IMG/VR virus record: IMGVR_UViG_3300033145_003233
Coordinates: 372,001-436,000 of that record
Direction: 5' to 3' (one strand)
DNA: 64,000 bases
Shown: piece after piece, positions 11,385 to 59,181 of the stretch
How the letters are laid out: every line of letters starts with the position of its first letter
Position numbering within the stretch: position 1 is the stretch's first letter
The notes under the pieces: model-generated
The model's input: the letters and a program-made list of their open reading frames with translations, nothing else
Told to the model about the DNA's origin: nothing
Databases searched by the model: none
Translations under genes and position numbers: made by a program

Positions 11385-11945
11385 TTACTTAATTTCTTTT
11401 TTATCTATATCTAATATTTCAAAACGATCTTTTATTCCACCCTCTGCCCTTCTCTCTCTCTCCTTTTCTACATAATACTTTATCTCCCCCTGAGTGATAA
11501 GAAACCTATCATTCACCACGACCCCCATATCTAAATCATCAACATGTCTACCAATAAAATTTTTAGAAAATTCTTGATGACGAGAAACTACTTCCCAATC
11601 TATCTTATCGTGATATTGATCCATAAAAGATTCTGACAACTTTTGTTTAACACACACAATATCCCAACAATGGATATAAGTCGCAAAAACCCCTAAAAAC
11701 TCATTAGATACCTTATTCTCGGCAAGAAGTACTCTCCAATTAATTTTAACAGGAAATCGTAAAAGAGAACATTTTAAATTATATTGAGTTATATAATGCT
11801 CAACAGATTTTTGAACTGTCCTGCTATAAGCTATAGAATCATCAGGATGCCTCCCGACTACAACCCTACTAGAGTCATTACAATTAGTGCCGTGACGATT
11901 GTTCCCATTAGGGTTATTCCTAATTATTGGACCTTTTTTAGCCAT
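11385..11945 (-). CDS. Tryptophan-repeat-like protein with near-terminal RFEILDI tag
   Basis: Repeats W..V...Q.LSE.F; ends DRFEILDIDKKEIK. Confidence 0.6.
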   Translation of the reverse strand: MAKKGPIIRNNPNGNNRHGTNCNDSSRVVVGRHPDDSIAYSRTVQKSVEHYITQYNLKCSLLRFPVKINWRVLLAENKVSNEFLGVFATYIHCWDIVCVKQKLSESFMDQYHDKIDWEVVSRHQEFSKNFIGRHVDDLDMGVVVNDRFLITQGEIKYYVEKERERRAEGGIKDRFEILDIDKKEIK

Positions 11946-11947
11946 TT

Positions 11948-12778
11948 TTAAAACTCGAATATCTGTCCTTCTTTAACAAAACCAGCAAATCCATCTGCTA
12001 CAGCATCAGGCATTACACCATACCTTTTGCTACCTTCCTCATCAAATTTAGATAAATCTGTATAATGATAAAGCCATATATCTTTTTTACGATCAGAAGG
12101 CATCCTTTTTAATATATCATAATTACAATGAATACCACCCGAATTAAGGGTGTCAGCATCTTGAAAAACTAAATCTATTTCCTCATCCCAAATCTCGTCA
12201 GGAGGACAAGACACAGTATCAGAAGAGATATATAATCTTTTCTTGTATTTATCTAAACCCTTACGATGATGATAAATTATCGACAAGCCATAACTATACA
12301 TATCTCCCACAAAAGAATCTACATGAAGATTCTTAACGAGATTACACTCCATTGTCGTAAACCAAAAATCAAGATGTCTATCATAAACTATATGAAGATT
12401 AAAATAAGTTTCAAGAGTCTCAAATCTAGTTCCCTTATGTTGCCTGTTCATGGCCGGTGATAACATCTGCCATAAACTATCAACCAAAGACTCATGAATA
12501 TAAAGATATATCTTACGTTTTAAAACGAAATAATTATAATAAGCCAACCAGCTCAAACCACCCATATGATCATAATGCAAATGACTAATATAAACGCCAT
12601 CTATTTCTTCTACTTTTCTATTCGCATTCTTCAGAGATTGACTGATATCCTCCCCACAATCAATCAATAAGGTATATTTGTCCCTCTTAGCTTCTGTCGC
12701 CGGAATATCTATCAACATATTAGAATTAAATCCTTCTGACAAAGCACCTGAGACACCTAAAAACGTTAATTTTGACAC
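11948..12778 (-). CDS. MBL-fold metallo-hydrolase, Apyc1 (anti-Pycsar)-like
   Basis: LLIDCG, ISHLHYDH (HxHxDH), SSDT, FQD, IH..Y..L..MP....IWLYHY. Confidence 0.75.
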   Translation of the reverse strand: MSKLTFLGVSGALSEGFNSNMLIDIPATEAKRDKYTLLIDCGEDISQSLKNANRKVEEIDGVYISHLHYDHMGGLSWLAYYNYFVLKRKIYLYIHESLVDSLWQMLSPAMNRQHKGTRFETLETYFNLHIVYDRHLDFWFTTMECNLVKNLHVDSFVGDMYSYGLSIIYHHRKGLDKYKKRLYISSDTVSCPPDEIWDEEIDLVFQDADTLNSGGIHCNYDILKRMPSDRKKDIWLYHYTDLSKFDEEGSKRYGVMPDAVADGFAGFVKEGQIFEF

Positions 12779-12841
12779 AATTATACCCTTTATACTAAAA
12801 TCTTAATATTCTTTATATCCGCTAATTTCTCTATTAATATA

Positions 12842-13657
12842 CTAACATAAAATTTCATTTTTGTCAAGATTATAATAAACTTTTTTTATCCATTCTATAA
12901 ATTCTCTTTTGGACATTATATCCTTTGCCCTATTACATATAGAACAACAAGGGACACAATTATCCAATTCATAGCCTTTTAAATTAACGACCCTATCTAT
13001 ACCGTTATAATGAAAACCTCCATTATTATTAGGAGCTGGATTATAATTAGATAAATCAGACCCACAATAAGAACAATTTTTCTGAGTAATTTCTTTAAAT
13101 TCTTCTTTATTTAATCTAAAAACTATTCCTTTTCTATTGGCCCTATTTCTATACTGAGAATAAATAGCATTAAAAGCTGCTTCTCCTTTTTTCTTACTGT
13201 TTACTTCTGATGCTCTTTCTTTTGCCAAACATCCACAACTCCTTGTACGCTTCTTACCAGAAACAAGAGAAGCCATTTGAATCCATTTTTCATCACCACA
13301 ATCACATTTACACAACCATTTTGTAACAAATCTTTTACCTGATTTAAACCTTTTGTGACTTGAAGTAACTACTAATTTGCCAAATCTTTTACCGCTTAAA
13401 TCAATTAAATCTTTTTTACCACTAATTTTATTTGCTCTATTCTTCATTAAAATAGAGTTATTTTCTTTTCTATAACAACCGCAACTCACATAAGAGCCAG
13501 AAGTGATAGAAGATCCTCTAATCCATTTCTTATTTCCGCAATCGCAAATACATAACCAATACGCTTTCTTGCTGTTATACTCTCTTCTCAATTCATATTC
13601 AGAAGACACAGCCAATCTCCCGAACTTTTGCCCCTCAAGATTTTTTACTTTTCCCAT
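12842..13657 (-). CDS. HNH homing endonuclease
   Basis: Two G.KFG.L.V..WLC.CDCG..SCGC modules plus NGIDR...NCVPCC..CN. Confidence 0.85.
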   Translation of the reverse strand: MGKVKNLEGQKFGRLAVSSEYELRREYNSKKAYWLCICDCGNKKWIRGSSITSGSYVSCGCYRKENNSILMKNRANKISGKKDLIDLSGKRFGKLVVTSSHKRFKSGKRFVTKWLCKCDCGDEKWIQMASLVSGKKRTRSCGCLAKERASEVNSKKKGEAAFNAIYSQYRNRANRKGIVFRLNKEEFKEITQKNCSYCGSDLSNYNPAPNNNGGFHYNGIDRVVNLKGYELDNCVPCCSICNRAKDIMSKREFIEWIKKVYYNLDKNEILC

Positions 13658-13805
13658 TATCCTTCTCCTGTTTAGAATATTGAACCATATAGTCCCTAAT
13701 TACTTCTGATATGGTTTTATAATCATCATTACAGGCATTTTTAAAAGACTTATATAATGAAGGATAAACCATAACTCTAATTTCTTCTGTCATTTTTTCT
13801 TTCAT
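13635..13805 (-). CDS. RHH-like regulator, not in ORF track
   Basis: MKEKMTEEIRVMVYPSLYKSFKNACNDDYKTISEVIRDYMVQYSKQE...; GGAG SD. Confidence 0.7.
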   Translation of the reverse strand: MKEKMTEEIRVMVYPSLYKSFKNACNDDYKTISEVIRDYMVQYSKQEKDNGKSKKS

Positions 13806-13824
13806 ATCTTCTCCATTATATTAT

Positions 13825-18786: not shown

Positions 18787-19257
18787 CTAAGGTCTAAAAT
18801 CTAAAATCTCAAATCTATTTTCTATAAGAATGTCCTCTCTATCTTTAATCGTATAAGGGGCACATTCTCCATCAGTGAAATCCTCAGAAGTCAGATGGGC
18901 ATTGATAATATACCCCCCATTAAAACCATTTGATGATGCAGGACTCATAAACCAAGATTGTTTATACTCCCAAAAATCAACATGAACAGGAATCTCTATA
19001 TCATGTCTTTTTAAAAAAATTATATCCATAAGACGAGGTTGTGCCTTATATCTAATTTCCCATTCGTGATAACCAGCCTTTGCACATATTAATTCTAATT
19101 GATATATATCATACTTAAAAGGAGGGAAACGAGCAACCCCTTCCATTGTAGATATTACAACTGATAAACCATCTGGAAAGTCAGGATAATAAAGAGACCA
19201 TTCGTCCCATTTAAACGAACGCAAATATTTTAACGCCTTCTGTATTTCTGTTATCAT
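18787..19257 (-). CDS. Hypothetical protein with near-terminal RFEILDF tag
   Basis: Ends IENRFEILDFRP. Confidence 0.65.
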   Translation of the reverse strand: MITEIQKALKYLRSFKWDEWSLYYPDFPDGLSVVISTMEGVARFPPFKYDIYQLELICAKAGYHEWEIRYKAQPRLMDIIFLKRHDIEIPVHVDFWEYKQSWFMSPASSNGFNGGYIINAHLTSEDFTDGECAPYTIKDREDILIENRFEILDFRP

Positions 19258-19742
19258 AAATCCAATAATTCAAATCGACTACAATATTCTTCATAAGCAT
19301 CTTTAGTATCTTCAGCAGAAGCGAATAAAGAGATATTAGTATCTTCTAATTTCAACTCTATTCTCACATGATCATTAATGGTATTAGCAATAGCAAATAG
19401 ATGGTATGTCCTCCCATCAGGTCTAGCGGTTATATCTGCTTTAAATCTATATTCTTCCCTGCCTAATTGGAGATCGACATCTGTGGTATGTAATATTGAA
19501 GAAGCTAAAGACCCAGCATTTTTAAATATAAATTTAAACTTTTCTTTATTAGCAGAATCTATCTTGACATAATAAGTAATAAGAGGAGACAAAATAACTT
19601 TCCTATCTCCCCTCACAAAAGCAATTCTTTGAGAAAAATCTATATTAATATTTGCATATTTTTCTATAGATATTCTTTCCCCATTATCGCAAATAATAAA
19701 AAAATATTTTGGATCAGGAACGAGAACTGTCAACAAATTCAT
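19254..19742 (-). CDS. Hypothetical protein with C-terminal RFELLDL tag
   Basis: Ends SRFELLDL-stop. Confidence 0.65.
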   Translation of the reverse strand: MNLLTVLVPDPKYFFIICDNGERISIEKYANINIDFSQRIAFVRGDRKVILSPLITYYVKIDSANKEKFKFIFKNAGSLASSILHTTDVDLQLGREEYRFKADITARPDGRTYHLFAIANTINDHVRIELKLEDTNISLFASAEDTKDAYEEYCSRFELLDL

Positions 19743-33015: not shown

Positions 33016-34998
33016 TCAAAACAAATCCTCAAACATATCCACTGATTCTATTTTCTTTTTCGTTGTTTTTTTACGATCTCTCCTGATCATCAAAAAATCT
33101 TCCATCATTTCTTCCTTACGATCTATTTGCTTTTTCCCGAAAAATCCCGCTTCGATTAAAGCCTCCACCGCTCTAGTATCTACAATAGAAGAATCAGTTT
33201 TATTCACTATATCCCTCATGCCGCTATAAGGCTGATTGTCCTCTATATGCTTAGCCGTATTTGCTCTCATTCCCTTACATAACAAACTAGGTCTTATCTC
33301 TGTCTTTTTTATCCCGTTTTTTTCATCTTTTCTTTTTTCTATAACATATTGAACCTTCGATTTATTTATGTCTCTAGGAAGGAATTTGATATTCATTTTC
33401 CTTTTAAACTCTTTCTCAAAAGCATCTATTTTATCATATCTGTTTCCCTGAGAACCATTAATAGTCACATCTAACAAAGAGCAAATAAATTCATCAGGAT
33501 AATTAGCTTTCAAAAATGCCGTAGTATAAGAGTTGTATCCATAACAGGCACTATGAGCTAAATTAAATCCATACGAAGCAAATGGAGTAATAAATTTAGT
33601 CCAGTATTGTTGAGCTACATCCCTTGGAACCTTATTATCTATACATCCATCAACAAACTGTTTTTCAAACTTAGCCATAAGATATTCTTTTTTCTTTCCA
33701 ATGGCCTTAATCATTACATAACCATCTGTAATAGTAAAACCAGCTAAGTTGCTACATATCTGCATCACTTGTTCTTGAAAACACAAAACCCCATAAGTCT
33801 TTTTTAGATAAGACTTTACAAAAGGCTCAATTGACTTGTGGAAATAAGTTACTTCTTTTTCTCCGCTCTTCCTATCACAATATTCTGGAATACTATCCAT
33901 TGGACCAGGACGATAAAGAGCCAAACCAGCAACAATATCTTCAAAACTATCAACACCTATACTTCTCATGGTATGTTGCATACCATAATTCTCACATTGA
34001 AAAACTCCACCCAAATTACCATCTCTATATAATTTAAAAGCTCCCGCGTCATCAATAGGGAGATTCTCCAAATCAATTTCTATCCCCCAATAATCTTTTA
34101 TTTTTTCTACTGTTTTCTTAATTACCGTCAAAGTGGCAATAGCTAGAACATCAAATTTAATCAACCCCAAAACTTCTAAATCTTCATTAGGAAATTGGGT
34201 TGCCAGCACCCCCTTCTTAGCATTTCTTAATGGAGCTATTTCATTTAAAGGAATATTAGAAACAACCACGCCAGCCGCATGAAAACCGAAATTAGCGAAT
34301 GTGCCTTCGATCACCTCCATATACTCTTTTATACCTGTATCTTCGTACTTATCTATATAATGTCTAAAATCTGGACAATGCTCATAAGCATCATCGAAGG
34401 TTTTAATAAGATGACTATTCCCCCCTTCATCTTTAACTTTAAGCAAGCCATATTTCGGAAATGGTGATAAAATTTCAGAAGCCTTAGCAGCATTTTCGCT
34501 TATATAGGAATCTTTTCCTTTATGAAAAGCATCTGCGATATCTAGTGCTTTAACCACCCTAGTAACACATGATTTAAATTTTAATAAACCATGAGTACCT
34601 ATATTCCCAACATTCTCTCTGCCGTACTTATTTATAATATAACTATATACACCATCCCTATTCTCATAATCAAAATCAGTATCTATATCAGGCAAGCCAG
34701 CTCTAGCAAAAGCACGTCTGGTGGGGAGGAAATCTCCCGATGGCTTAGTTTTAGTCATACCAAGAAAATAGGCCGTCCAGCTATTAATATCATTCCTATT
34801 ACCAGCTTTTTTATCATGATTTTTCCATATATTGTAAAAAACTTCCAAATTATTCCTAGATTCCAGCCCCTCTGTAGTTTCCATTAATTCCATTTCTCGC
34901 TTTGCTTTTGAAAGAATTTTGGATAAATCAGAATGATCAGCGTATTTTCTCTCCACCGCCTCTATGATTTCTAACTTAATTACCCTCAATTCTGCCAT
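33016..34998 (-). CDS. dnaE: DNA polymerase III alpha subunit, C-terminal (catalytic) part
   Basis: PDIDTDF, HAAGVV, KFDVL, GVFQ.E, YRPGPM, FQEQVM, YGFN..HS. Confidence 0.93.
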   Translation of the reverse strand: MAELRVIKLEIIEAVERKYADHSDLSKILSKAKREMELMETTEGLESRNNLEVFYNIWKNHDKKAGNRNDINSWTAYFLGMTKTKPSGDFLPTRRAFARAGLPDIDTDFDYENRDGVYSYIINKYGRENVGNIGTHGLLKFKSCVTRVVKALDIADAFHKGKDSYISENAAKASEILSPFPKYGLLKVKDEGGNSHLIKTFDDAYEHCPDFRHYIDKYEDTGIKEYMEVIEGTFANFGFHAAGVVVSNIPLNEIAPLRNAKKGVLATQFPNEDLEVLGLIKFDVLAIATLTVIKKTVEKIKDYWGIEIDLENLPIDDAGAFKLYRDGNLGGVFQCENYGMQHTMRSIGVDSFEDIVAGLALYRPGPMDSIPEYCDRKSGEKEVTYFHKSIEPFVKSYLKKTYGVLCFQEQVMQICSNLAGFTITDGYVMIKAIGKKKEYLMAKFEKQFVDGCIDNKVPRDVAQQYWTKFITPFASYGFNLAHSACYGYNSYTTAFLKANYPDEFICSLLDVTINGSQGNRYDKIDAFEKEFKRKMNIKFLPRDINKSKVQYVIEKRKDEKNGIKKTEIRPSLLCKGMRANTAKHIEDNQPYSGMRDIVNKTDSSIVDTRAVEALIEAGFFGKKQIDRKEEMMEDFLMIRRDRKKTTKKKIESVDMFEDLF

Positions 34999-36978: not shown

Positions 36979-38391
36979 TTAATAACGGTCTACTCCCCCA
37001 AGATCATCTTCTAATTCTCTATCTACATCTCCTTTATCGGCGGCTTGTTGAATAAGGTTTTCCTCAAAGCCAAAATCTGACTCTTTTATAAACTTGAGCG
37101 AATCAAACCCAAGGAATCTCTCCCACAACAACCCATGTTCTATAGGGTCAATCCCATATGTAATCCCCAAACACCTCAACAAGACACTCGCATAACCCGA
37201 TCCACGCCCACAACCAACTAATATACCTCGTTCTTTGGCATCCTGGATATAATCTCGAACAATCAAAAAATAAGTCGAAAAATCATAATTATTACTTTCC
37301 TGTGCTACCAAAACATCTTTTAATTCCAGTTCTAATCTTTCAACATGTTTTTTACTATTATTCCATCCTACAGTCTTCATGCCTTCCCATGCAAGACGAC
37401 ACAAATATTCATAAGCATTTTTATATTCAGATGGAATTTCAAATTTGGGCAACCTCATTCCCCCAAATAAATTTTCTTCTATGTTCTTGGTATCTATTCG
37501 TTCAGCCAGCATAACAGAATTAGATAAACAATTAGAAGTGTTATTAAATATCTTCGCCATTTCTTCTGCACTTTTAAGATAGAACTCCATATGACTAAAA
37601 CTCAACCTGTCTGGATCTTTAACGCAACGTTGTTGTGACATGCACATTAAAACTTCTTGAGATTGGCCTTCTTTTCCAATTATATAGTGCCCATCATTCG
37701 TGCAAACTACAGGAATATTTAATTCAGAGGATAGTTTAAAAATTAAGGGGATAATCGCTTTCTCTTCCCTGATACCGTGGTACATTACTTCTAAAAAGAA
37801 ATTCTTATTAAATATCTCATTAAAAGTCCCGCATATCTTCTTTGCTCTATCATAGTTGCCATATACCAAATTGATATTAATAACACTTGATAAACAAGCA
37901 GAGCTACACATCACTCCCTCAGAATGCTTAGCCAGCAAATCTATATCAACTCTTGGATCAAAATAAAAACCATCAGTATATGACTTCTGAGACATACGAC
38001 ATATATTCTGATAACCCTTAAAATTCATAGCATATAAGTTGATATGCCTGTTTCCCCTTCTCCCATCAGGTTGGTTCTTTTTAGTTTTTTTAGTATCTTT
38101 TTTTTCATCGTATTGCCCTATATCCATTTTTCTAGAAAGATACATCTCACACCCAAGTATGGGTTTGATAGGAGCATAGGGAATACTATTGCCTTTTTTA
38201 TCTTTTGTGATACGACAATGTTGAAGGAATTTAATCCATCCCATAACAGACCCATGATCTGTTAGGGCAATAGCAGGAAACCCCATTTGCCTAGCTTTCA
38301 AAACAAGCTTATCAATTTTCGCGAGACCATCAAATTGGCTATACTCAGAATGTACGTGCCAATGAACAAAATCTTTATTTTCAAATTTCAT
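36979..38391 (-). CDS. dnaE: DNA polymerase III alpha subunit, N-terminal (PHP) part
   Basis: HVHSEYS..DG, TDHG, TNDGHY, YFLIV.D, GRGSG, LLWERFL. Confidence 0.93.
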   Translation of the reverse strand: MKFENKDFVHWHVHSEYSQFDGLAKIDKLVLKARQMGFPAIALTDHGSVMGWIKFLQHCRITKDKKGNSIPYAPIKPILGCEMYLSRKMDIGQYDEKKDTKKTKKNQPDGRRGNRHINLYAMNFKGYQNICRMSQKSYTDGFYFDPRVDIDLLAKHSEGVMCSSACLSSVININLVYGNYDRAKKICGTFNEIFNKNFFLEVMYHGIREEKAIIPLIFKLSSELNIPVVCTNDGHYIIGKEGQSQEVLMCMSQQRCVKDPDRLSFSHMEFYLKSAEEMAKIFNNTSNCLSNSVMLAERIDTKNIEENLFGGMRLPKFEIPSEYKNAYEYLCRLAWEGMKTVGWNNSKKHVERLELELKDVLVAQESNNYDFSTYFLIVRDYIQDAKERGILVGCGRGSGYASVLLRCLGITYGIDPIEHGLLWERFLGFDSLKFIKESDFGFEENLIQQAADKGDVDRELEDDLGGVDRY

Positions 38392-38394: not shown

Positions 38395-38562
38395 TTACCA
38401 ATTCCAATTATCTAAACATTTAACGCAGAACGACTCAAATTCTTCCCTTGTAAGATGAGAATCAGGAGTGACTAATCTATGAATTGCCTTTCCTTCATCT
38501 AAATCCTTATAAGAAATGAATCTGCCGCAAAACTCACATCTTATTCGTTCTACTTTTTTCAT
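38395..38562 (-). CDS. Small Zn-finger protein
   Basis: CEFCGRFI...CVKC; ATGA overlap start. Confidence 0.6.
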   Translation of the reverse strand: MKKVERIRCEFCGRFISYKDLDEGKAIHRLVTPDSHLTREEFESFCVKCLDNWNW

Positions 38563-38918
38563 AAATCTAAAATATCCCACCTCGTTATATCATCATCTAT
38601 ATCTAATATTTTATGCTTTTTTGTGGTAGCATTAATCTCTACAACATGAGCAAAGGGGACTCTCTTCATTGTGGTCTTGACCCCCTTTTTGAAAGCTAAT
38701 AAATCAAGAGTTTGATCTTCGTATATTTTTAAAACTCTTACTTTCTCAAAATCTAAATTAAAAAAATCTTCCTGATGAGGAAGCCACTTCTTCATAGTCA
38801 TAGAAAATTCTATTCTATGATCATAAAGATTTTTAAAAACAATCTTGATAGTATCTATGTCTGACAACTCTTTATTGAAAATAGTTGTAACTATATGTTC
38901 TCGTCTAATAAATCTCAT
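38559..38918 (-). CDS. Hypothetical protein with RWDILDL tag
   Basis: Ends ITRWDILDL-stop. Confidence 0.7.
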   Translation of the reverse strand: MRFIRREHIVTTIFNKELSDIDTIKIVFKNLYDHRIEFSMTMKKWLPHQEDFFNLDFEKVRVLKIYEDQTLDLLAFKKGVKTTMKRVPFAHVVEINATTKKHKILDIDDDITRWDILDL

Positions 38919-38920
38919 CT

Positions 38921-39181
38921 TTAGCAATGCTTCGTAGGATCGTATCTCTCCCTATGACCATCTTTAAATCTAATGTACTTCGGATTTTGTTTTTTAACAT
39001 AATTAGAATCAGCTTCAAAACACTCTCTATCACCTCTCCATCCCCTAATATTCTTGGGAACTTTTATTCTTATACATTTTGTCCCATCAGGAGCATAAAA
39101 AGGTTTATTAATCTTTTTAAATGGTCTTATTTCCTCAAAAATTTCTCCCGTCTCTGGATGTTCAAATTCGTAAATTGGAAT
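38921..39181 (-). CDS. FmdB-like small protein with ATT start, not in ORF track
   Basis: GGGGAG SD then ATT CCA ATT TAC GAA TTT = (M)PIYEFEHPETGEIFEE; 86 codons open, fills an operon gap. Confidence 0.7.
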   Translation of the reverse strand: MPIYEFEHPETGEIFEEIRPFKKINKPFYAPDGTKCIRIKVPKNIRGWRGDRECFEADSNYVKKQNPKYIRFKDGHRERYDPTKHC

Positions 39182-39193: not shown

Positions 39194-39724
39194 CTATAAA
39201 TCTAAAATATCAAACCTAGAAATAGATTCCCCTTTAGATTTCTTTTTCCTTTTCTTTTTTACTTTTTTCTTTGATTTTTTCGCTGCCTCAGTCGGAGAAT
39301 CTGGAAAAACCGTGTTCCACTCTATCCCACTAACATGACCCTCATTATATGGTTCACTCAATGTCGAAGAAGATATAGTGAAGCCCGAAGAAAAATGGAC
39401 AGGATTATTAAAATGAATTTGAGAGTTAGCAGTCATATTGATATAATTACCAGAGCTATCCTCGACATATGGCTCAATATGGATAGGATTCTCAGACATT
39501 TGCAATTCACCCGTTTGCACAGTAAGATTAATAGGCAACTGCTTTTCTATTACAAAATTTTTATTTTCAGAAAGATTAAATTGTAAAAATTCTAAAAAAG
39601 TTATACCGGAAACACAACTTTGCATATCATCATGCAAAGTTAAATATTCTGCACGAATATCTAAATAATCTTGTTCTTCATTAAAAACAACTGAGAGATT
39701 TTCTATATTATGCGAATAACTCAT
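39194..39724 (-). CDS. Hypothetical protein with RFDILDL tag
   Basis: Ends ISRFDILDL-stop. Confidence 0.65.
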   Translation of the reverse strand: MSYSHNIENLSVVFNEEQDYLDIRAEYLTLHDDMQSCVSGITFLEFLQFNLSENKNFVIEKQLPINLTVQTGELQMSENPIHIEPYVEDSSGNYINMTANSQIHFNNPVHFSSGFTISSSTLSEPYNEGHVSGIEWNTVFPDSPTEAAKKSKKKVKKKRKKKSKGESISRFDILDL

Positions 39725-39725: not shown

Positions 39726-39974
39726 TTACAAATCCAATATTTCTAACCTAGATAGACCTTCTTTTCTATCTGGGGAACTTTTAATTTTCACCATAAAATC
39801 TTCGTATTGACTCAAAGATTGCTCCATCTCATATATCATATCAAACAACACGGTATTAGGTTGATCTAATATTTGATCTACCTCCTCAATAGTTAATCCA
39901 TGAAATCTGGCGAAAGATGAGACACCTAATAGGAAGAATATCTCACTAAAACTGCGACCGTGCTGATCACCCAT
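39726..39974 (-). CDS. Hypothetical protein with RLEILDL tag
   Basis: Ends LSRLEILDL-stop. Confidence 0.65.
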   Translation of the reverse strand: MGDQHGRSFSEIFFLLGVSSFARFHGLTIEEVDQILDQPNTVLFDMIYEMEQSLSQYEDFMVKIKSSPDRKEGLSRLEILDL

Positions 39975-40765
39975 TATAAATCTAAGAGGTCAAATCTATC
40001 ACAGTTGTCCTCTTCTCCCCTATAATCCGTCCCTTCCTCTAACTTATCGGAATATATCCCCATAATTTTCCAACCCTTCTCCATAGCTAACTCCTTGGCC
40101 CTCGTAAAAATCCTTCTCCCATATTTTCTTTTAAATTCTTTGTATTTAAATTTGCTATATGCATTATAATGCCTAGTCTCTATTTTTTCCATTGCCAGAA
40201 TATTTCTTGTCGCTTCATCATAAGATATATTCATCAAATGCGGCAAAAAATTATACTTAATTATATGTTCATCTGAATGACCATTACTCCTTAAATATCC
40301 TATTGACCACCCATATGCAAATTCCTCCCTAATCTCACTACTAACAGAACGATGCCCCAAAGCAACATAACAATAATGACACAATTCATGAACAATAACT
40401 TCATCTTTACTTACCTTTGCCTCTATATGATAAGTTCTATTGACAGGAGTTGAGGAACGATGAGCACCACACAACACCACTATCTTCGTAACAGGGTCAT
40501 AGAAACCCTCCACTCCATGATATCCCATTCTATCCATGTCCCTGGCAGCAACTTTGAAAACCACTACATCTTTTACACTGGCCCCTGGAAATAAAGCATC
40601 TACATAATCATAAGCCTTTTGAAAATCTGTGTAATATATTTTCTTGAGAGCTATTTTTCTAATCTTTTCGATATTTTTTTGAGTTAGCTCAAACTGCTTC
40701 TTCGATTCTTGTCTGAAACCATGATCATACAAATAAGAATGAGATAAACTAGTAGCTCTAAACAT
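39974..40765 (-). CDS. Putative zinc metallopeptidase with RFDLLDL tag
   Basis: GFY...IVL, HELCH (HExxH), downstream EEFA. Confidence 0.65.
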   Translation of the reverse strand: MFRATSLSHSYLYDHGFRQESKKQFELTQKNIEKIRKIALKKIYYTDFQKAYDYVDALFPGASVKDVVVFKVAARDMDRMGYHGVEGFYDPVTKIVVLCGAHRSSTPVNRTYHIEAKVSKDEVIVHELCHYCYVALGHRSVSSEIREEFAYGWSIGYLRSNGHSDEHIIKYNFLPHLMNISYDEATRNILAMEKIETRHYNAYSKFKYKEFKRKYGRRIFTRAKELAMEKGWKIMGIYSDKLEEGTDYRGEEDNCDRFDLLDL

Positions 40766-45267: not shown

Positions 45268-46926
45268 TTACAAATCTAAATCTCTCGGTGGGTTAGTTAT
45301 CCCATGACTTGCTTTCTTCTTAGGTTCCTCATTAGCCTTCAAACATCTACTATCGGCCCATTCTTTCAACTCTTCAAAATCCCCTTCTCTCATCTTAAAC
45401 AATGGCTTAAAAGCCTTAAGACTTGCAAGGATATCATCAGTATCAATCGGTCTTTTTTTATCATGAAAACCAACCAACATAGCATTATCTATTGCCTTCT
45501 CTATTTCTGCTCCACTATATGTGTCGCTTCTTTCAGACAATAATTCCAAATTAAACTTCTTAGAATCTATACTTCTCAACCTTAGAAGAACCTCAAAAAT
45601 TTCTGCCCTTTCCTCTACATTGGGTAAATCCACAAAGAAAATCTCATCAAACCTACCAGCCCTAAGAAATTCAGGAGGAATGGCCTGATGGTCATTCGCA
45701 GTAGCCACAACAAAAACAGGGGATGTCTTTTCTTGCATCCAAGTTAGAAAAGTACTTAAAACACGACTAGTGGTTCCACCATCCGAGCGACCACTGGAAC
45801 TGTTCCCTGAAATAGCTTTTTCAATTTCGTCAATCCATAATATAGCTGGAGCAATAGCTTCCGCTAATTTAATAGCTTCCCTAGCATTCTTTTCAGAATC
45901 ACCGACAAGAGAACCAAATAGTCTACCAAAGTCCAGTCTAAGCAATGGAATTTTCCACGCACCACTAATAGCCTTGCACACCAGTGACTTCCCACATCCT
46001 GGCAACCCTATAGTTAAGAGACCTCTTGGCTTTTTTAATCCATAATCTTCAGCTTCCTGAGAAAAAGTTGTCTTCCTAGTTTTAATCCACTTAGTTAGTC
46101 TTTTCAAGCCTCCAATATCTTCCATAGATACTATATTATCATAATACTCTAGCATCCCACTCTTACTAATAAGTTGTTTCTTCTCCTGTAAAATATGTGA
46201 GATGTCCCATGAATGATGTGCAACTAAAGATTTAGAAAAGGCAGTTTGTGCTTCCATTAACGTTAATCCGCTAACAGAGTTTATTAATTCTTCTTCTTGA
46301 GCCTTAGTTTTTTTCTCTATATCAGGGATGCTTTTCTGAGCACCTCTTACAACGTCATATAAAGCGTGTCGAATTTCTTTTTTATTAGCAAAAGGAAAAT
46401 CTACCACAGGCATAAGATTTTCCAATACATCTGTAGCCTGATAATAAGGGCCTGTTACGATAGTGCATAAAATAGAATTTAAATTTGAGATAGCTTTAAA
46501 TCTTCTTTCAATATCTGGGTTATCGGTAATGAATCTGAAATAATCTAGCATAACATATATTATACCGTTAACTCCTTTATCTCTTTTCTCCTGAACAGTA
46601 GTTTTCTTTTTCTCGTAGGTTTTAGCCTCGCTAATAATATAGTCGAGAATAGCCAAGGGATTATTTTTCAACTCCTCAGTAGCAGTAACCTCTTCAGCAC
46701 TGGATAGCTCAATTAGTCCATTATAACTATCCCACAAATAACATTCATATCCCTTTACTCTACAGAAGTGGTCCAAGAATTGAATCAGCCTTCTTTCTTC
46801 ATTAGTAGTAATATAAAATAGTGGGTAACGAGAACGTAACAAATTGGTGAAATCGTTCTTAAACTTATCTGTACACATTTCCTGCAATGTTGCTTCACTT
46901 ATTTTCTTGCTAATTTGTTTTGCCAT
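45268..46926 (-). CDS. AAA+ ATPase (Ycf46/SpoVK-like)
   Basis: EERR, IGGL..L, GLPGCGKS, WIDEIEK, TWMQEK, RAGRFDEIFFVDLP. Confidence 0.9.
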   Translation of the reverse strand: MAKQISKKISEATLQEMCTDKFKNDFTNLLRSRYPLFYITTNEERRLIQFLDHFCRVKGYECYLWDSYNGLIELSSAEEVTATEELKNNPLAILDYIISEAKTYEKKKTTVQEKRDKGVNGIIYVMLDYFRFITDNPDIERRFKAISNLNSILCTIVTGPYYQATDVLENLMPVVDFPFANKKEIRHALYDVVRGAQKSIPDIEKKTKAQEEELINSVSGLTLMEAQTAFSKSLVAHHSWDISHILQEKKQLISKSGMLEYYDNIVSMEDIGGLKRLTKWIKTRKTTFSQEAEDYGLKKPRGLLTIGLPGCGKSLVCKAISGAWKIPLLRLDFGRLFGSLVGDSEKNAREAIKLAEAIAPAILWIDEIEKAISGNSSSGRSDGGTTSRVLSTFLTWMQEKTSPVFVVATANDHQAIPPEFLRAGRFDEIFFVDLPNVEERAEIFEVLLRLRSIDSKKFNLELLSERSDTYSGAEIEKAIDNAMLVGFHDKKRPIDTDDILASLKAFKPLFKMREGDFEELKEWADSRCLKANEEPKKKASHGITNPPRDLDL

Positions 46927-52126: not shown

Positions 52127-52900
52127 CTAACAATCTGATTTAACCCATGATTTTTGTCTTACTTCTATCCCAAAAAATTGTGGCCAATATTTTCTACACA
52201 TAGTAAAATGCTCTCCTACAGTTTTATCCTGATGTATTGTAGTAACACTATTATCATGCTTTCTATAATAAACTAATGGCTGAAGGATATTATCAAATTT
52301 ATATCCATACGAAATAGCCTTGCCCCATAAATAGAAATCTGGCACTAATCTCCACTCTGCCGAATACCCCCCTATTTTTTCAAAAGCTCGTCTCCTAAAC
52401 ATACTAGCAGGATCTATTATAGGATTTTTTACTTTTAAAAATTCTGCTCTTATCTCTTTGTGTGTCGGTGGAGGATAGTCCATAATCTCTAGCTCTTCAC
52501 CATTCTCATCTATTTTAATGGCCCAGGAACTAACACAAAATACATCTTGATGATCTTCAAGAAAAGCAACTTCCTTTTCTAATCTCTCTGGAAAACTAAT
52601 ATCATCTGCATCATGTATAGCTAAATACTTTCCCTGAGCATATCTAATAGCTTCATTCCTGCCTGCTCCACAACCTATATTTTTCTTTTCTCCCAATTCC
52701 TTAATCGCGATAAAACGATTCAAAATCCCCCCTTTACTATATGCTTTTAATATTTCAAAAGTATTGTCAGTAGAGGCATCATCATAAACAATGAGTTCAA
52801 AATCTTTAAATGTTTGTGAAAAAATAGAATCTAATGCTTCCTCTATAAACTCCTCACAATTATAAACAGTCATAATTATACTAACTTTTGGCCTTTTCAT
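52127..52900 (-). CDS. Glycosyltransferase family 2
   Basis: VSIIM.VYN, DDASTD, RN, DADD. Confidence 0.92.
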   Translation of the reverse strand: MKRPKVSIIMTVYNCEEFIEEALDSIFSQTFKDFELIVYDDASTDNTFEILKAYSKGGILNRFIAIKELGEKKNIGCGAGRNEAIRYAQGKYLAIHDADDISFPERLEKEVAFLEDHQDVFCVSSWAIKIDENGEELEIMDYPPPTHKEIRAEFLKVKNPIIDPASMFRRRAFEKIGGYSAEWRLVPDFYLWGKAISYGYKFDNILQPLVYYRKHDNSVTTIHQDKTVGEHFTMCRKYWPQFFGIEVRQKSWVKSDC

Positions 52901-53121
52901 AAATCTAATATCTCCCATCTGCTATTAATCGGATCATGAAACCCTTCTAAGCAATCTTCTCTCCATTCAAAAACACCAACCCTTTTTAAAATATATTTAT
53001 CTTTATATATCTTCCTTACCACAGTGGTTCTATCATTTAATTGGTTTATACACGCTTGTGCCGCTGAATTACAAATCAAATCTGTTCTTATCCTTACCTT
53101 GTCCCCTACTTTATACTTCAC
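52897..53121 (-). CDS. Small KOW/SH3-like protein with RWEILDL tag
   Basis: MKYKVGDKVRIR; ends INSRWEILDL-stop. Confidence 0.7.
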   Translation of the reverse strand: MKYKVGDKVRIRTDLICNSAAQACINQLNDRTTVVRKIYKDKYILKRVGVFEWREDCLEGFHDPINSRWEILDL

Positions 53122-56487: not shown

Positions 56488-56538
56488 TCACTTTCTTCTT
56501 AAAAATATAAATATTAGAATAACACTAAGGAAAATAAA

Positions 56539-57426: not shown

Positions 57427-57933
57427 ATGAAAAGAATGTTAGTAGTTATAATTATCTTATTAATAATTATTGCTGGTTTGTTAATAGACAACTTTTACCC
57501 TGATATCAGAATAGAGATACAAGATGGAATTTATGCCTCCAAAACGTCCAATAAAATTATAAAAGAAGCTAATGAATGTATATCTCTGTGTAATAAATGC
57601 GGAGAAAAATTAACTCGTTGTGGCCCCATCAGTATATATGCTGCTCTTGATTATACAATTCGAGGTTCTTTTTGTGCTATCTGTAATAAATGTCTATCTG
57701 GTATTAAAGATATTAACTTAGAGAATATTATAAATTCGGGAATAGGAAAAATTTTAACTTATCCTTCTAATGTATATATACCTGATAATAAATTCTGGAA
57801 CATATGGGGAGAAGTTTATATAAGATCAAGAGATGCAAATAAAAATAAAGAATTATTGGTAGAAATAGGCTTTTATGATAAATTCGATGAAAAAGCTCTT
57901 CGCAATTTTAATATTTTCACTGGACAAATCTAA
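57427..57933 (+). CDS. Membrane-anchored/secreted hypothetical protein
   Basis: AGGAG SD, N-terminal TM helix, CxxC pairs. Confidence 0.65.
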   Translation: MKRMLVVIIILLIIIAGLLIDNFYPDIRIEIQDGIYASKTSNKIIKEANECISLCNKCGEKLTRCGPISIYAALDYTIRGSFCAICNKCLSGIKDINLENIINSGIGKILTYPSNVYIPDNKFWNIWGEVYIRSRDANKNKELLVEIGFYDKFDEKALRNFNIFTGQI

Positions 57934-58008
57934 TTCATTTTCAAATGTTTTTTTTAATTACTTAATAATCAAGATATATCTACTCCATCCTAAATTTTTA
58001 TTTCCTTC

Positions 58009-58036
58009 TTGAAAGTGAAAATATAAATGTTAAAAT
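58009..58036 (+). promoter_or_regulatory. sigma70-like promoter
   Basis: TTGAAA GTGAAAATATAAATGT TAAAAT. Confidence 0.55.
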
Positions 58037-58361
58037 GGCATCTATGTTTAAAATCGAAGAAGAAATTCAACTAACAAAAAATGGAGATTTTTTACAAAGT
58101 TCTAAAGAACTTAGAGAATACTACACCCCTAGAACTATAGGCTATCATAAATATTGCGATTCAAATCGATCAAAAGATTCTTTCATGTATTTACACAGAA
58201 CATCAAAACAAAAAAATACCATCTTTTGTAAAAAATGTAATTTTAGAATTGAGATACCCCTAAAAGTAAATAATTTCAAAAAAATAAAAAAATATTTTGA
58301 AAATAGATTTGATGATCCAATTGATAGAATCCAAGACAGATCAGAAATTTTAGATTTATGA
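58035..58361 (+). CDS. Hypothetical protein with RSEILDL tag
   Basis: Ends IQDRSEILDL-stop. Confidence 0.65.
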   Translation: MASMFKIEEEIQLTKNGDFLQSSKELREYYTPRTIGYHKYCDSNRSKDSFMYLHRTSKQKNTIFCKKCNFRIEIPLKVNNFKKIKKYFENRFDDPIDRIQDRSEILDL

Positions 58362-58864
58362 TGAAACTCGAAAAAGATTTTATACAATGTTGTGCAGAAT
58401 TTTTATTCAAAATAGCTGATTTTGAAGACTATGATGATAAACACTATATTAGTATGGGCCACGGGGATGGAGAACACCTTTGTTTTAAGTGTTGTGAAAA
58501 AGAAGTCGAAAAAATTAATAAAGAATTGCCCGAGAATGAAGAAAAAGCTTTTGTAGATGGAGGATGGAATGGTGCGGGTATTGACGGAAATGATGAAGGA
58601 CCTGATTCCTGTGATATATGCTATAAAAAATTAGATTATTCTTTATCTGAAAGTGGAGTTATACAAGAATGTAAATTTTTCTTAGAGGAAGACTTAGTAG
58701 AAATAACTCCGAATAATGCTGCTGAACTATATTATCTTTTCGACAATAGTGATAATTATGATTTTCAAGGTAATGACTTAAATAAATTGACAAAATTAGC
58801 CAATAAAATTTGGCGTCTTTTAGATCAAACAATTGAGAGTAGGTTTGAGATTTTAGATTTATGA
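58358..58864 (+). CDS. Hypothetical Cys-containing protein with RFEILDL tag
   Basis: Ends IESRFEILDL-stop. Confidence 0.7.
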   Translation: MMKLEKDFIQCCAEFLFKIADFEDYDDKHYISMGHGDGEHLCFKCCEKEVEKINKELPENEEKAFVDGGWNGAGIDGNDEGPDSCDICYKKLDYSLSESGVIQECKFFLEEDLVEITPNNAAELYYLFDNSDNYDFQGNDLNKLTKLANKIWRLLDQTIESRFEILDL

Positions 58865-59181
58865 GATATAAAGTAGGAGATAAAGTAAGAATAAAGACGC
58901 AAGAACAAATGAGGGAAGAAGGACATGTGGGAAGACATAGTAATAAGGTGATAGTCTGTAATTATAGATATTTTTTTGATTCGATAGAATCTGATGTCAA
59001 TAAATATTCTACAGATAGAATATTAACAATTGCAAGTGTAGAAAACGATGAGGATGGGGATTATTATTACACAATGAAAGGGATGTGTTGGAGATGGAAC
59101 GATCCTATGATTGAAGGTATAGTAAAAAATTGTGAGAAGCCCATATCTATTAAAAGCAGATTTGATATTTTAGATTTATGA
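58861..59181 (+). CDS. Small KOW/SH3-like protein with RFDILDL tag
   Basis: MRYKVGDKVRIK (paralog of 52897-53121); ends IKSRFDILDL-stop. Confidence 0.7.
   Translation: MRYKVGDKVRIKTQEQMREEGHVGRHSNKVIVCNYRYFFDSIESDVNKYSTDRILTIASVENDEDGDYYYTMKGMCWRWNDPMIEGIVKNCEKPISIKSRFDILDL

What the first reader, a model, noticed from the sequence alone, without database searches (positions are those of the whole stretch)
11385..59181. Shared C-terminal peptide tag R-[FWLS]-[ED]-[IL]-L-D-L-stop on many unrelated proteins
Seen: 11 ORFs end exactly in this motif: 19254 SRFELLDL, 35052 LRFEILDL, 35283 SRFEILDL, 38559 TRWDILDL, 39194 SRFDILDL, 39726 SRLEILDL, 39974 DRFDLLDL, 52897 SRWEILDL, 58035 DRSEILDL, 58358 SRFEILDL, 58861 SRFDILDL. 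Two more carry it a few residues from the end (11385 DRFEILDIDKKEIK, 18787 NRFEILDFRP). The carriers are mostly unrelated (a metallopeptidase, two KOW-like paralogs, Trp-repeat, capsid-like fragment, Zn proteins), lie on both strands and cluster in mini-arrays. Codons vary synonymously (Arg AGA/AGG/CGA, Phe TTT/TTC, Glu GAA/GAG, Leu TTA/TTG/CTC), so selection is on the peptide, not a DNA repeat. No core replication enzyme carries it. Inference: an element-wide address label, i.e. a short linear motif that recruits diverse cargo to one hub, such as capsid packaging of internal proteins, an AAA+ unfoldase/protease (degron), or a host or phage scaffold. I know no named family for this tag.
Basis: partly seen in the sequence, partly recalled or inferred. 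Interest (0 to 1): 0.93.

Follow-up and report, generated by a model that had tools for sequence, protein, structure and literature searches.

The report
Phage-wide C-terminal docking peptide tag
About one in twelve proteins of this uncultured 548-kb phage, mostly small, acidic and unrelated to each other, end in the same peptide (…P-I-x-S-R-F-E-I-L-D-L); it looks like an address label that plugs them all into one shared partner, probably the phage's own DNA sliding clamp or its Cdc48-like unfoldase, and nothing like it is on record for phages at this scale.

Summary
The window has 13 tags, 11 exactly at a stop; shuffles give about 0.01. The whole 547,943-bp phage genome has about 71, against 0.16 expected. 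Two related phage contigs have 35 and 28, and a distant 386-kb relative has 11 in 20 kb. The full motif is [ED]-P-I-x-[NSD]-R-F-[ED]-I-L-D-[LI]-COOH.

Carriers are 38-263 aa, acidic, and fall into about 49 unrelated sequence clusters with no shared Pfam domain. Orthologues at 30-70% identity keep the tag. So do all 101 full-length homologues of one carrier and 141 of the best 150 homologue-cluster representatives of another. The tag follows a variable, disordered linker. The DNA consensus never occurs outside in-frame C-termini, so selection acts on the peptide.

It is a short linear docking motif for a common hub, and the hub is not resolved. My leading candidate is the phage's own divergent beta sliding clamp. 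The tag has the x-Φ-acid-Φ-Φ form of clamp-binding motifs, as T4 gp43, gp33 and gp55 share one tail. The close rival is a Cdc48/p97-like AAA ATPase whose own C-terminus ends in [KR]-[DE]-L-D-L. This is a new variant of a known kind and of high interest.

The parts
11385..11945 (-). Carrier, 186 aa. Tag DRFEILDI at 11406-11426, followed by 6 residues.
   Evidence: PHROG 3532, unknown function. The G2 orthologue ends DRFDILDM.
18787..19257 (-). Carrier, 156 aa. Tag NRFEILDF at 18796-18816, followed by RP.
   Evidence: No Pfam or PHROG hit.
19254..19742 (-). Carrier, 162 aa, ends SRFELLDL-stop.
   Evidence: Orthologues in G1 and G2 at 38-45% identity keep SRFEILDL and ERFEILDL.
35052..35264 (-). 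Carrier, 70 aa, ends LRFEILDL-stop. It lies between the two DnaE halves.
   Evidence: The G2 orthologue ends NRFEILDL.
35283..35513 (-). Carrier, 76 aa, ends SRFEILDL-stop. It lies between the two DnaE halves.
38559..38927 (-). Carrier, 122 aa, ends TRWDILDL-stop. Conserved member of the replication module.
   Evidence: Orthologues at 68-71% identity end NRFDILDL and DRFDILDL.
39194..39724 (-). Carrier, 176 aa. A folded N-terminal part, then a long low-complexity Lys-rich linker, then SRFDILDL-stop.
   Evidence: Only faint Pfam hits (POT1/OB, E 0.03).
39726..39974 (-). Carrier, 82 aa, ends SRLEILDL-stop.
39974..40765 (-). Carrier, 263 aa and the largest. A conserved HExxH (zincin-like) protein that ends DRFDLLDL-stop.
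   Evidence: All 101 full-length homologues (103 hits, two of them fragments), down to 34% identity, end in tag variants. H126, E127 and H130 are invariant. AF2 model has pLDDT 90, with residues 245-263 at low confidence. Column conservation is 0.62 in the body, 0.37 in the linker and 0.72 in the tag. Foldseek gives only weak zincin matches.
52897..53121 (-). Carrier, 74 aa, 'MKYKVGD' family, ends SRWEILDL-stop.
58035..58361 (+). Carrier, 108 aa, ends DRSEILDL-stop. Its stop overlaps the next gene's ATG.
58358..58864 (+). Carrier, 168 aa, Cys-rich, ends SRFEILDL-stop. Its stop overlaps the next gene's ATG.
58861..59181 (+). Carrier, 106 aa, 'MKYKVGD' family, ends SRFDILDL-stop.
   Evidence: Of the best 150 homologue-cluster representatives, 141 carry the tag.
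45268..46926 (-). Hub candidate and partial tag bearer: a Cdc48/p97-like tandem AAA ATPase of 552 aa that ends …PPRDLDL-stop.
   Evidence: Pfam AAA plus lid. PHROG 8638. AF2 pLDDT 85, and Foldseek matches p97 D1-D2 at E 4e-20 with TMq about 0.6. It is the fourth most conserved of 187 three-way orthologues. The tail [KR][DEQ][LI]D[LI] is conserved in most of about 60 homologues and in Corndog gp96.
33016..34998 (-). DnaE C-terminal half, 660 aa, ending …SVDMFEDLF. This is the polymerase's own clamp-binding-type tail and serves as the comparator for the tag.
   Evidence: Pfam. Tails in relatives: ETIDIFG, ETVDLFA, GADIFG and VFDMFS.
36979..38391 (-). DnaE N-terminal half (PHP domain plus the start of the palm). 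Tagged mini-genes fill the gap between the two halves.
   Evidence: The split is conserved in relatives.

Best explanation
The tag is a short linear docking motif, [ED]-P-I-x-[NSD]-R-F-[ED]-I-L-D-[LI]-COOH. It sits at the end of a flexible, fast-evolving linker. Its job is to tether about 70 small, acidic, otherwise unrelated phage proteins (about 8% of the genes) to one common partner. That much is shown or follows directly from the data.

The identity of the partner is inferred. I take it to be the phage's own, highly divergent beta sliding clamp. The clamp gene lies outside the window at genome 295,780-297,093, in the order DnaX clamp loader, sigma-like factor, clamp, delta subunit. On this reading the tag is a clamp-binding motif of the x-Φ-acid-Φ-Φ type:
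- tag: R-F-[DE]-I-L
- bacterial consensus: Q-L-[SD]-L-F
- T4: S-L-D-F-L
- this clade's DnaE: [ST]-[VIA]-D-[MIL]-F

The clamp loaded on replicating phage DNA would then act as a tool belt. It would concentrate accessory proteins, transcription proteins and host-takeover proteins on the phage genome, as T4 does with the interchangeable C-terminal tails of gp43, gp33 and gp55. The Cdc48-like AAA ATPase, whose own tail ends in L-D-L, would be one more client of the same site.

Confidence differs by layer. That the tag is a peptide-level hub-docking motif: about 0.9. That the hub is the phage clamp: about 0.35-0.4, and that is the figure given below.
For: Enrichment at C-termini:
- 72 of 73 genome matches lie within 16 residues of a stop, against 0.16 matches expected.
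- Of 132 tags in three genomes, 106 lie exactly at the stop.

The peptide is selected, not the DNA:
- Arg, Phe, Ile and Asp codons follow genome usage.
- The DNA consensus with up to 4 mismatches hits only in-frame tags: 51 of 55 hits, and the other 4 are offsets of tags.
- Distant relatives keep the peptide with other codons.

Retention across relatives:
- Essentially all reciprocal-best-hit orthologue pairs keep the tag, at 30-70% body identity.
- All 101 full-length homologues of the HExxH carrier keep it.
- 141 of the best 150 'MKYKVGD' family representatives keep it.

Linker architecture:
- In the HExxH family, conservation is 0.62 in the body, 0.37 in the linker and 0.72 in the tag.
- The tail of the AF2 model has low pLDDT.

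For the clamp specifically:
- The phage encodes a clamp: ESM Atlas structural TM 0.76/0.87 to DnaN and PHROG 947.
- It also encodes delta and DnaX, with a faint sigma-like ORF between them.
- DnaE ends in a canonical-type clamp tail in every lineage examined.
- T4 gp43, gp55 and gp33 end in SLDFLFG, SLDFLYEAND and TLDFLL. [quoted passage not shown]
- Tagged genes crowd the replication module: 6 of the 14 genes between DnaB and DnaE-C, and 11 of 33 genes in the distant relative L088.
- The AAA family's L-D-L tail is present in mycobacteriophage Corndog, which has a clamp and no polymerase.
- That tail is absent from Rhizobium phage L338C, where no clamp was found.
Against: - The polymerase tail (…D-[MIL]-F) and the tag (R-F-[DE]-I-L-D-L) stay consistently different across the clade. 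In T4 the tails are nearly identical.
- The tag's invariant Arg1 and Asp6 are not features of known clamp-binding motifs.
- Seventy clients for a two-pocket ring is a lot. Their nature does not suggest replisome work: tiny Zn-ribbons, two membrane-anchored proteins, coiled coils.
- A classical clamp client, the NAD-ligase at genome 70,837-72,918, has no tag.
- The clamp is too divergent to align with solved DnaN structures, so conservation of its pocket could not be checked.
- No binding test or complex prediction was possible with these tools.
Confidence: 0.38

Rival explanations
1. The tag is read by the phage's Cdc48/p97-like AAA unfoldase. It serves either as a tether for adaptors and co-factors, as SspB's C-terminal XB peptide does on ClpX or VIM/VBM/SHP motifs do on p97, or as a C-terminal degron. 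As a degron it would allow timed removal of early host-takeover proteins. The tagged HExxH protein would be the protease partner, giving an FtsH-like machine split into two proteins.
For: - The AAA ATPase is a tandem D1-D2 Cdc48/p97-like protein.
- It is the fourth most conserved protein of the clade.
- It sits in the same module as several conserved carriers.
- A processive machine naturally handles about 70 client types.
- Carriers are small (none over 270 aa) and their termini are exposed and disordered.
- An HExxH protein with the tag is conserved next to it.
- Its own C-terminus carries the minimal L-D-L motif.
Against: - No ClpP-like or proteasome-like peptidase is present.
- If the ATPase were the receptor, its own tag-like tail would need an extra cis-regulation story.
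- Corndog and L338C have the ATPase without any tag set.
- The L338C homologue lacks the L-D-L tail, which fits a receptor other than the ATPase itself.
- The AF2 monomer model shows no docking of the tail on its own domains.
Confidence: 0.28
2. The tag is a sorting signal. It delivers the small proteins into the capsid for co-injection, or into some phage-built compartment. The analogues are encapsulin cargo-loading peptides, the T4 capsid-targeting sequence and the peroxisomal PTS1 signal.
For: - About 8% of the proteome shares a terminal label, which is typical of sorting signals.
- Carriers are small and cluster in arrays of fast-evolving genes that look like anti-host effectors.
- A type II AAA ATPase and a PspA/ESCRT-III homologue are both highly conserved in this phage.
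Against: - Carriers are acidic, with median pI 5.2.
- Two are membrane-anchored.
- Many sit inside the replication (early or middle) module, far from the structural genes.
- An ATPase in the replication module carries a related tail, also in the siphovirus Corndog.
- No shell or compartment gene was identified.
Confidence: 0.12
3. The tag docks onto a conserved host protein, for example the host beta clamp, RNA polymerase, a chaperone or a protease. The small proteins would be host-takeover factors aimed at one host hub.
For: - The tag is nearly invariant over a wide, diverse clade, as expected if the target is a slowly evolving host protein.
- The carriers look like typical early, acidic, host-directed phage proteins.
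Against: - The related ATPase tail occurs in phages of very different hosts, a Mycobacterium phage and these low-GC phages.
- Seventy different inhibitors of a single site make little sense.
- The host is unknown, and the scan of prokaryote genomes found no cellular proteins with the tag.
Confidence: 0.1
4. The conserved unit is a DNA or RNA element, three tandem AGATTTN heptamers at gene ends, for example a processing, regulatory or recombination site. The peptide would be a by-product.
For: - The commonest tag DNA is exactly (AGATTTN)x3.
- Leu codons at tag positions 5 and 7 are TTR in 223 of 228 cases across three genomes, although CTN makes up 30-46% of Leu codons elsewhere.
- GAG is over-used at position 3.
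Against: - All copies are in one reading frame and end at a stop. There are no intergenic or out-of-frame copies.
- Third codon positions vary as in the rest of the genome.
- Substitutions are conservative at the amino-acid level: F/Y/W, I/L/M, L/I/M.
- Distant relatives keep the peptide while breaking the heptamer pattern.
- The heptamer 'N' positions are fixed by the peptide.
Confidence: 0.03
5. All carriers belong to one hyper-diverged paralogous family, and the 'tag' is merely its last conserved structural element.
For: - Carriers form tandem arrays: 43 adjacent pairs against 5 expected.
- Two real families exist, of 14 and 7 members.
Against: - There are 49 BLAST clusters and no shared Pfam domain.
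- Lengths run from 38 to 263 aa, and the architectures clearly differ: Zn-ribbons, an HExxH enzyme, TM-anchored proteins, coiled coils.
- The tag is separated from the fold by a disordered linker.
Confidence: 0.04

Closest known systems
T4-family sliding-clamp-binding motif (SCBM) shared by gp43, gp33 and gp55
   Same: Both are short hydrophobic and acidic peptides at the extreme C-terminus of unrelated proteins. Both sit on a divergent flexible linker and dock onto one phage-encoded ring. The T4 tails read here are SLDFLFG, TLDFLL and SLDFLYEAND. The description comes from PMC2988020.
   Different: T4 has three carriers and this phage has about 70. In T4 the polymerase carries the same tail, but here the polymerase tail is a distinct variant. 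The clamp here is a beta/DnaN-type dimer fold, not gp45. Binding is untested.
Bacterial beta-clamp-binding motif QL[SD]LF / QLxLxL
   Same: The first five tag residues follow the same x-Φ-[acid/Ser]-Φ-Φ pattern. The motif is often C-terminal. The hub carries many clients ('tool belt'). The consensus is quoted from my own knowledge and from reviews such as PMC9690074, which was listed but not read.
   Different: The tag has Arg where the consensus has Gln, has no terminal Phe, and adds an invariant Asp-Leu and an upstream P-I-x-[SN]. The strict consensus is not met.
PIP-box / PCNA interactome of eukaryotes and archaea
   Same: Dozens of unrelated proteins carry one short linear motif, often C-terminal, for a sliding clamp. 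Some versions also act as degrons.
   Different: The consensus is different (Qxx[ILM]xx[FY][FY]). The clamp family and the domain of life also differ.
C-terminal docking tails of AAA unfoldases and their adaptors: HbYX of PAN, Cdc48 and PA200 on the 20S proteasome; the p97 C-terminal tail on PUB/PUL domains; the SspB XB peptide on ClpX
   Same: Short C-terminal peptides are shared by different proteins that plug into one machine. The Cdc48-like ATPase here has a conserved C-terminal tail that overlaps the tag.
   Different: The sequence is different, no partner peptidase was found, and the number of carriers is far larger.
Cargo-loading peptides of encapsulins and the T4 capsid-targeting sequence
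   Same: A terminal peptide shared by unrelated cargo directs it into an HK97-type shell.
   Different: The T4 sequence is N-terminal and is cleaved off. Encapsulin cargo genes sit next to the shell gene. Here the carriers are acidic and lie in the replication module and in separate arrays.

Membership tests
Clamp-binding motif (bacterial CBM / T4 SCBM) | A short hydrophobic-acidic peptide, exposed at a terminus on a flexible linker | tested here: met
   The logo from 132 tags, with 106 at the very C-terminus. The linker is variable and of low pLDDT.
Clamp-binding motif (bacterial CBM / T4 SCBM) | Match to the consensus QL[SD]LF, QLxLxL or [ST]LDFL[FYL] | tested here: inconclusive
   R-F-[DE]-I-L fits the x-Φ-acid-Φ-Φ pattern. 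It lacks Gln1 and the terminal Phe, and it has an extra invariant D-L. Comparison used the T4 tails read.
Clamp-binding motif (bacterial CBM / T4 SCBM) | A cognate clamp and clamp loader encoded by the element | tested here: met
   Clamp, delta and DnaX. The Pfam clamp models themselves do not hit, so the clamp is very divergent.
Clamp-binding motif (bacterial CBM / T4 SCBM) | The replicative polymerase carries the same motif | tested here: not met
   DnaE ends in [ST]-[VIA]-D-[MIL]-F, with or without further residues. This is related to the tag but consistently different from it.
Clamp-binding motif (bacterial CBM / T4 SCBM) | Physical binding in the clamp's hydrophobic cleft | not testable with these tools
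   No complex prediction or binding assay was available. The clamp cannot be aligned to solved DnaN by sequence.
AAA+ degron or adaptor-tether peptide | An unfoldase encoded by the element and conserved together with the tag | tested here: met
   A Cdc48/p97-like ATPase is present in G0, G1, G2 and L088.
AAA+ degron or adaptor-tether peptide | A partner self-compartmentalised peptidase | tested here: not met
   PF00227 and PF00574 are absent from the genome. Only a tagged HExxH protein of unknown activity is present.
AAA+ degron or adaptor-tether peptide | Tag-dependent binding or degradation | not testable with these tools
   This needs biochemistry or reporter assays.
Capsid or compartment cargo-loading peptide | Carrier genes linked to the shell or structural genes, and cargo compatible with packaging | tested here: not met
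   Carriers lie in the replication module and in arrays at 136-153 kb. They are acidic, and two are TM-anchored.
DNA tandem repeat (not a peptide) | Copies independent of reading frame and of coding context | tested here: not met
   Of 55 DNA matches, 51 are in-frame tags and the other 4 are offsets of tags.
Single paralogous protein family | Detectable homology outside the tag | tested here: not met
   49 BLAST clusters. No Pfam family is shared by two carriers.

The most novel reading that the evidence does not exclude
The tag is a genuine phage-encoded protein address system, not a simple clamp tether. A dedicated receptor, working with the Cdc48-like unfoldase whose own tail carries the minimal L-D-L, would recognise the C-terminal label on about 70 fast-evolving effector proteins. 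It would then process them catalytically: by translocation into a compartment or virion, by extraction, or by timed destruction. That would be a viral counterpart of PTS1/Pex or of effector-secretion signals, and it would be new for bacteriophages.
Probability: 0.25. Interest if true: 0.92.

Novelty: new variant of a known kind. Interest (0 to 1): 0.8.

Why it matters
If one peptide addresses about 8% of a huge phage's proteins to a single hub, three things follow.
- It gives a one-step handle on dozens of orphan genes of an uncultured clade: find the receptor and their site of action is known.
- It shows a modular way for phages to evolve accessory or anti-host functions, combining a variable domain with a constant docking tail.
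- It offers a portable 11-residue tag-and-receptor pair for engineering.

If the hub is the clamp, it extends the T4 'clamp as tool belt and mobile enhancer' idea from three clients to a proteome-wide scale, on a beta-type clamp. If the hub is the Cdc48-like ATPase, it would be the first p97-style cofactor network in a virus of bacteria. The tag is also a cheap sequence marker for recognising members of this clade in metagenomes.

Tried and rejected
- Pfam and PHROGs on the carriers gave no informative hits. The carriers are orphans.
- Sequence search for a clamp found nothing: PF00712, PF02768 and PF09116 do not hit. The clamp was found only through ESM Atlas structure and features, and PHROG 947.
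- PDZ_2, proteasome and ClpP families are absent from the genome. FEN is absent too.
- The NAD-ligase is present but untagged.
- PDB sequence searches with three unannotated replication-module proteins and with the clamp profile found nothing useful.
- The fold of the HExxH carrier gave only weak zincin matches: IrrE, YbeY, thermolysin. A Spartan/SprT-like link to clamps could not be supported.
- The AF2 model of the ATPase does not dock its own tail.
- The search for related loci with the clamp alignment returned only the two relatives already known.
- The cultured-phage collection has no relative of the clamp or of the HExxH carrier.
- The ATPase has relatives only in cluster-O mycobacteriophages and in some Rhizobium phages, and these have no tag set.
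- The scan of prokaryote genomes with the tag DNA found 18 sites. These are GATTT-type simple repeats or isolated 24-mers behind very short frames, not protein tags.
- Literature searches found no report of this tag.
This was suggestive only (hand-computed hypergeometric p about 0.09) and I do not use it.

Full report
**Context.** The window is bases 372,001-436,000 of a single 547,943-bp virus record. The record has 33.6% G+C, standard stop-codon use and about 830 densely packed ORFs, 87% of them on the minus strand. The window holds a replication module:
- a split DnaE;
- DnaB with a DnaC/IstB-like loader;
- a DnaG primase split into its Zn-ribbon and Toprim parts;
- RecA, UvrD and a weak gp32-like SSB;
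- an IF3 homologue;
- a 552-aa AAA ATPase.

Eleven ORFs end in R-[FWLS]-[ED]-[IL]-L-D-L followed directly by TAA, TAG or TGA. Two carry the motif 2 and 6 residues from the end. Triplet shuffles of the window give 0.01 matches on average.

In the whole genome a slightly relaxed motif gives 73 six-frame matches. Of these, 72 lie within 16 residues of a stop and 47 lie exactly at it. A residue-shuffled proteome gives 0.16. About 66-71 real genes carry the tag, which is 8% of all genes. Among ORFs of 60-180 aa the share is 13-20%, and no ORF above 270 aa carries it. A 16-kb array at genome 136.4-153.1 kb alone holds about 40. Carriers sit next to each other far more often than chance: 43 adjacent pairs against 5 expected.

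Aligning 132 tags from three genomes extends the motif to [ED]-P-I-x-[NSD]-R-F-[ED]-I-L-D-[LI]. Ile at position -3 occurs in 94 of 132. Arg1 and Asp6 are fixed by the search pattern, and the same two are the only invariant columns when the 61 carriers are aligned.

**The carriers are unrelated.**
- Without their tails, 70 carriers form 49 BLAST clusters: one family of 14, one of 7, two pairs, and singletons.
- Among 61 carriers scanned against Pfam, no family is hit by more than one of them.
- By eye they include mini Zn-ribbons, an 'MKYKVGD' family, a 140-aa family, coiled coils, two proteins with N-terminal transmembrane segments, and a 263-aa HExxH protein.
- They are acidic, with median pI 5.2 against 7.8 for other small proteins.

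**The tag is under purifying selection as a peptide.**
- Two IMG/VR contigs of 351 and 298 kb share about 54% median protein identity with this genome. They carry 35 and 28 tags, nearly all at the stop.
- In reciprocal-best-hit pairs, orthologues of carriers keep the tag. The apparent losses are near-variants such as RFNMLDL, RFKILDL and RFDYLDL. There is one true loss.
- All 101 full-length homologues of the HExxH carrier, down to 34% identity, end in a variant: RFDILDL, RYGMLDL, RFDLMDLD(W), FSFLDFDD, FGMMDFGF. In that family mean column conservation is 0.62 in the body, 0.37 in the 12-residue linker and 0.72 in the tag. AF2 models the body at pLDDT 90 and the last 19 residues at about 50.
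- Of the best 150 cluster representatives of the 'MKYKVGD' family, 141 are tagged.
- A 386-kb relative has 11 tagged genes among 33 in the syntenic 20 kb. A still more distant one has 3 of 18.

Both fail, so the tag stands.

**DNA or peptide?** The commonest tag DNA is exactly three tandem heptamers, AGATTTN, read in three frames. A nucleotide-level signal exists. Leu at tag positions 5 and 7 is TTR in 223 of 228 cases across three genomes, although CTN supplies 30-46% of Leu codons elsewhere. GAG is also over-used at position 3.

Other evidence points to the peptide as the selected unit:
- Arg, Phe, Ile and Asp codons follow genome usage.
- The 21-mer consensus with up to 4 mismatches occurs 55 times in the genome. 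Of these, 51 are in-frame tags and the other 4 are offsets of tags.
- Distant relatives keep the peptide while breaking the periodicity, for example AGA TTT GAG TTA ATG GAT TTA.
- The same 24-mer pattern hits 18 places in prokaryote genomes. Those are GATTT-type simple repeats or isolated copies behind frames a few codons long, not tags.

The TTR bias remains unexplained. It may reflect shared descent of a tag cassette that spreads by recombination at gene ends. It may also be linked to the frequent TTATGA stop/start overlap, seen at 18 of 47 tags.

**What reads the tag?** A peptide kept on about 70 unrelated proteins at the end of a disordered linker is a docking motif for a common partner. 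I looked for that partner.

*(a) Sliding clamp.* Pfam clamp models find nothing. The 437-aa ORF at genome 295,780-297,093 is nevertheless a beta clamp by ESM Atlas structure (TM 0.76/0.87 over 369 residues) and by PHROG 947. It lies in the order DnaX, a 240-aa ORF with faint sigma-70 r2/r4 hits, the clamp, and a HolA-like delta subunit.

The polymerase ends in a canonical-type clamp tail in every lineage: SVDMFEDLF, ETIDIFG, ETVDLFA, GADIFG, VFDMFS. The tag's first five residues follow the same x-Φ-acid-Φ-Φ pattern. So do the T4 tails, which I read from the T4 record: gp43 …SLDFLFG, gp55 …SLDFLYEAND, gp33 …TLDFLL. [quoted passage not shown] Tagged genes are concentrated in the replication module.

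*(b) A Cdc48/p97-like ATPase* (window 45268-46926). AF2 (pLDDT 85) and Foldseek align it over its full length to p97, VAT and Rix7 D1-D2, with E 4e-20 and TMq about 0.6. Its D1 lacks a detectable AAA signature. It is the fourth most conserved of 187 three-way orthologues.

It ends in a disordered tail, [KR]-[DEQ]-[LI]-D-[LI], followed by zero or one residue. That tail is conserved in most of about 60 homologues and overlaps the end of the tag. The homologue in mycobacteriophage Corndog, gp96, ends RVLDL. Corndog also encodes a clamp but no polymerase. The homologue in Rhizobium phage L338C ends MSLDS, and no clamp was found there. Neither phage has a tag set.

*(c)* No PDZ domain, ClpP or proteasome is present.

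**Weighing.** The ATPase tail suggests that the ATPase and the tagged proteins share a receptor. The three-lineage pattern of that tail fits a receptor that is the clamp better than one that is the ATPase itself. The motif class and the T4 precedent point the same way.

Against the clamp:
- The polymerase tail and the tag stay distinct throughout the clade.
- Arg1 and Asp6 are not clamp-motif features.
- About 70 clients of this kind are many for a two-site ring.
- The ligase is untagged.

A processive unfoldase would handle many clients more naturally. A split FtsH-like pair, the ATPase plus the tagged HExxH protein, is conceivable.

My estimates:

| Hub | Probability |
|---|---|
| Phage clamp | about 0.38 |
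| Cdc48-like ATPase as receptor | about 0.28 |
| Sorting into virion or compartment | about 0.12 |
| A host hub | about 0.10 |
| DNA element or single paralogous family | a few per cent together |

That the tag is a peptide docking motif at all, I put at about 0.9.

**Novelty.** I found no report of the motif or of a proteome-wide C-terminal tag in phages. No cultured phage has the clamp or the HExxH carrier. The kind of feature is known: a short linear motif shared by clients of a hub. The scale, the sequence and the clade are new.

Noticed in passing
window 33016-38391: DnaE is split into two ORFs, PHP plus the start of the palm, and then the rest. About 2 kb lies between them and holds a 345-aa Zn-finger ORF (35859-36896), two tagged mini-genes, and a 110-aa ORF (35494-35826) whose end (EDDLGGVDRY) duplicates the end of the DnaE N-terminal half. 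The split is conserved in relatives, with different small ORFs in the gap. One distant relative has DnaE in three pieces. It looks like a long-standing insertion hotspot for mobile genes.
   Followed up: partly
window 45268-46926: A Cdc48/p97-like tandem AAA ATPase with a degenerate D1. It is very conserved and has a conserved [KR][DE]LDL C-terminal tail that is also seen in mycobacteriophage Corndog gp96 (RVLDL). Many metagenomic homologues are interrupted: there are 334-aa N-terminal fragments, and several carry PF14890, which I recall as an intein splicing domain.
   Followed up: partly
tags throughout; window 58338-58358 is an example: The commonest tag DNA is three tandem AGATTTN heptamers read in three frames. 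The two Leu codons are almost only TTR in all three genomes, and Ile at position 7 is almost only ATA. This is unexplained.
   Followed up: partly
outside the window, genome 294,578-299,078 (L080:14578-19078): A gene run of DnaX clamp loader, a 240-aa ORF with faint sigma-70 region 2 and 4 hits, a very divergent beta clamp, and HolA-like delta. A sigma-like gene between loader and clamp recalls clamp-activated late transcription in T4.
   Followed up: partly
window 47011-47520: A phage-encoded translation initiation factor IF3 homologue (PHROG 9787, E 2e-30), syntenic with the ATPase in relatives, where it hits IF3_N and IF3_C.
   Followed up: no
outside the window, genome 249,552-251,394 (L078:9552-11394): A PspA/IM30 (bacterial ESCRT-III) homologue, the third most conserved protein of the clade. 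Next to it is a glutamate-receptor-like ion channel (SBP_bac_3 plus Ion_trans_2).
   Followed up: no
outside the window, genome 228,069-231,719; window 9180-9557: An RNA-repair-like set: Ro60/TROVE with a vWA domain, a second AAA ATPase beside it, an RlaP-family nucleotidyltransferase at genome 310,485-311,393, and a cREC_REC receiver domain that is the most conserved protein of the clade.
   Followed up: no
outside the window, genome 124,900-134,000 and 279,642: Nine paralogues of about 255-290 aa end in …HPFINE or …PFING. This is an ordinary paralogous family with an extended conserved C-terminus, not a second tag.
   Followed up: partly
window 11948-12778: A metallo-beta-lactamase-fold protein that scores 47.9 bits on the anti-Pycsar Apyc1 model, just under the 50-bit cut-off. 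It is a possible anti-defence nuclease of cyclic nucleotides.
   Followed up: no
window 56000-60000: A local strand switch where the GC skew changes sign. It holds the only three plus-strand carriers, chained by ATGA stop/start overlaps.
   Followed up: no
L091:17398-17958 (Rhizobium phage vB_RleS_L338C): A 186-aa ORF immediately upstream of the replicative helicase gene, overlapping its start, ends …DRYEILDM plus 6 residues. It is a lone tag-like C-terminus in an unrelated cultured phage that has the ATPase homologue. It could be chance or a real relative of the motif.
   Followed up: partly
window 42898-44436 and 30609-31319: DnaB and the gp32-like SSB have acidic tails of their own that end in an aromatic residue (…DIDDVF, …DDFANNW). 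Relatives have similar tails (…EEDDWNF, …ENDFFD, …DDEFNF). This may be a second tail code within the same replisome.
   Followed up: no
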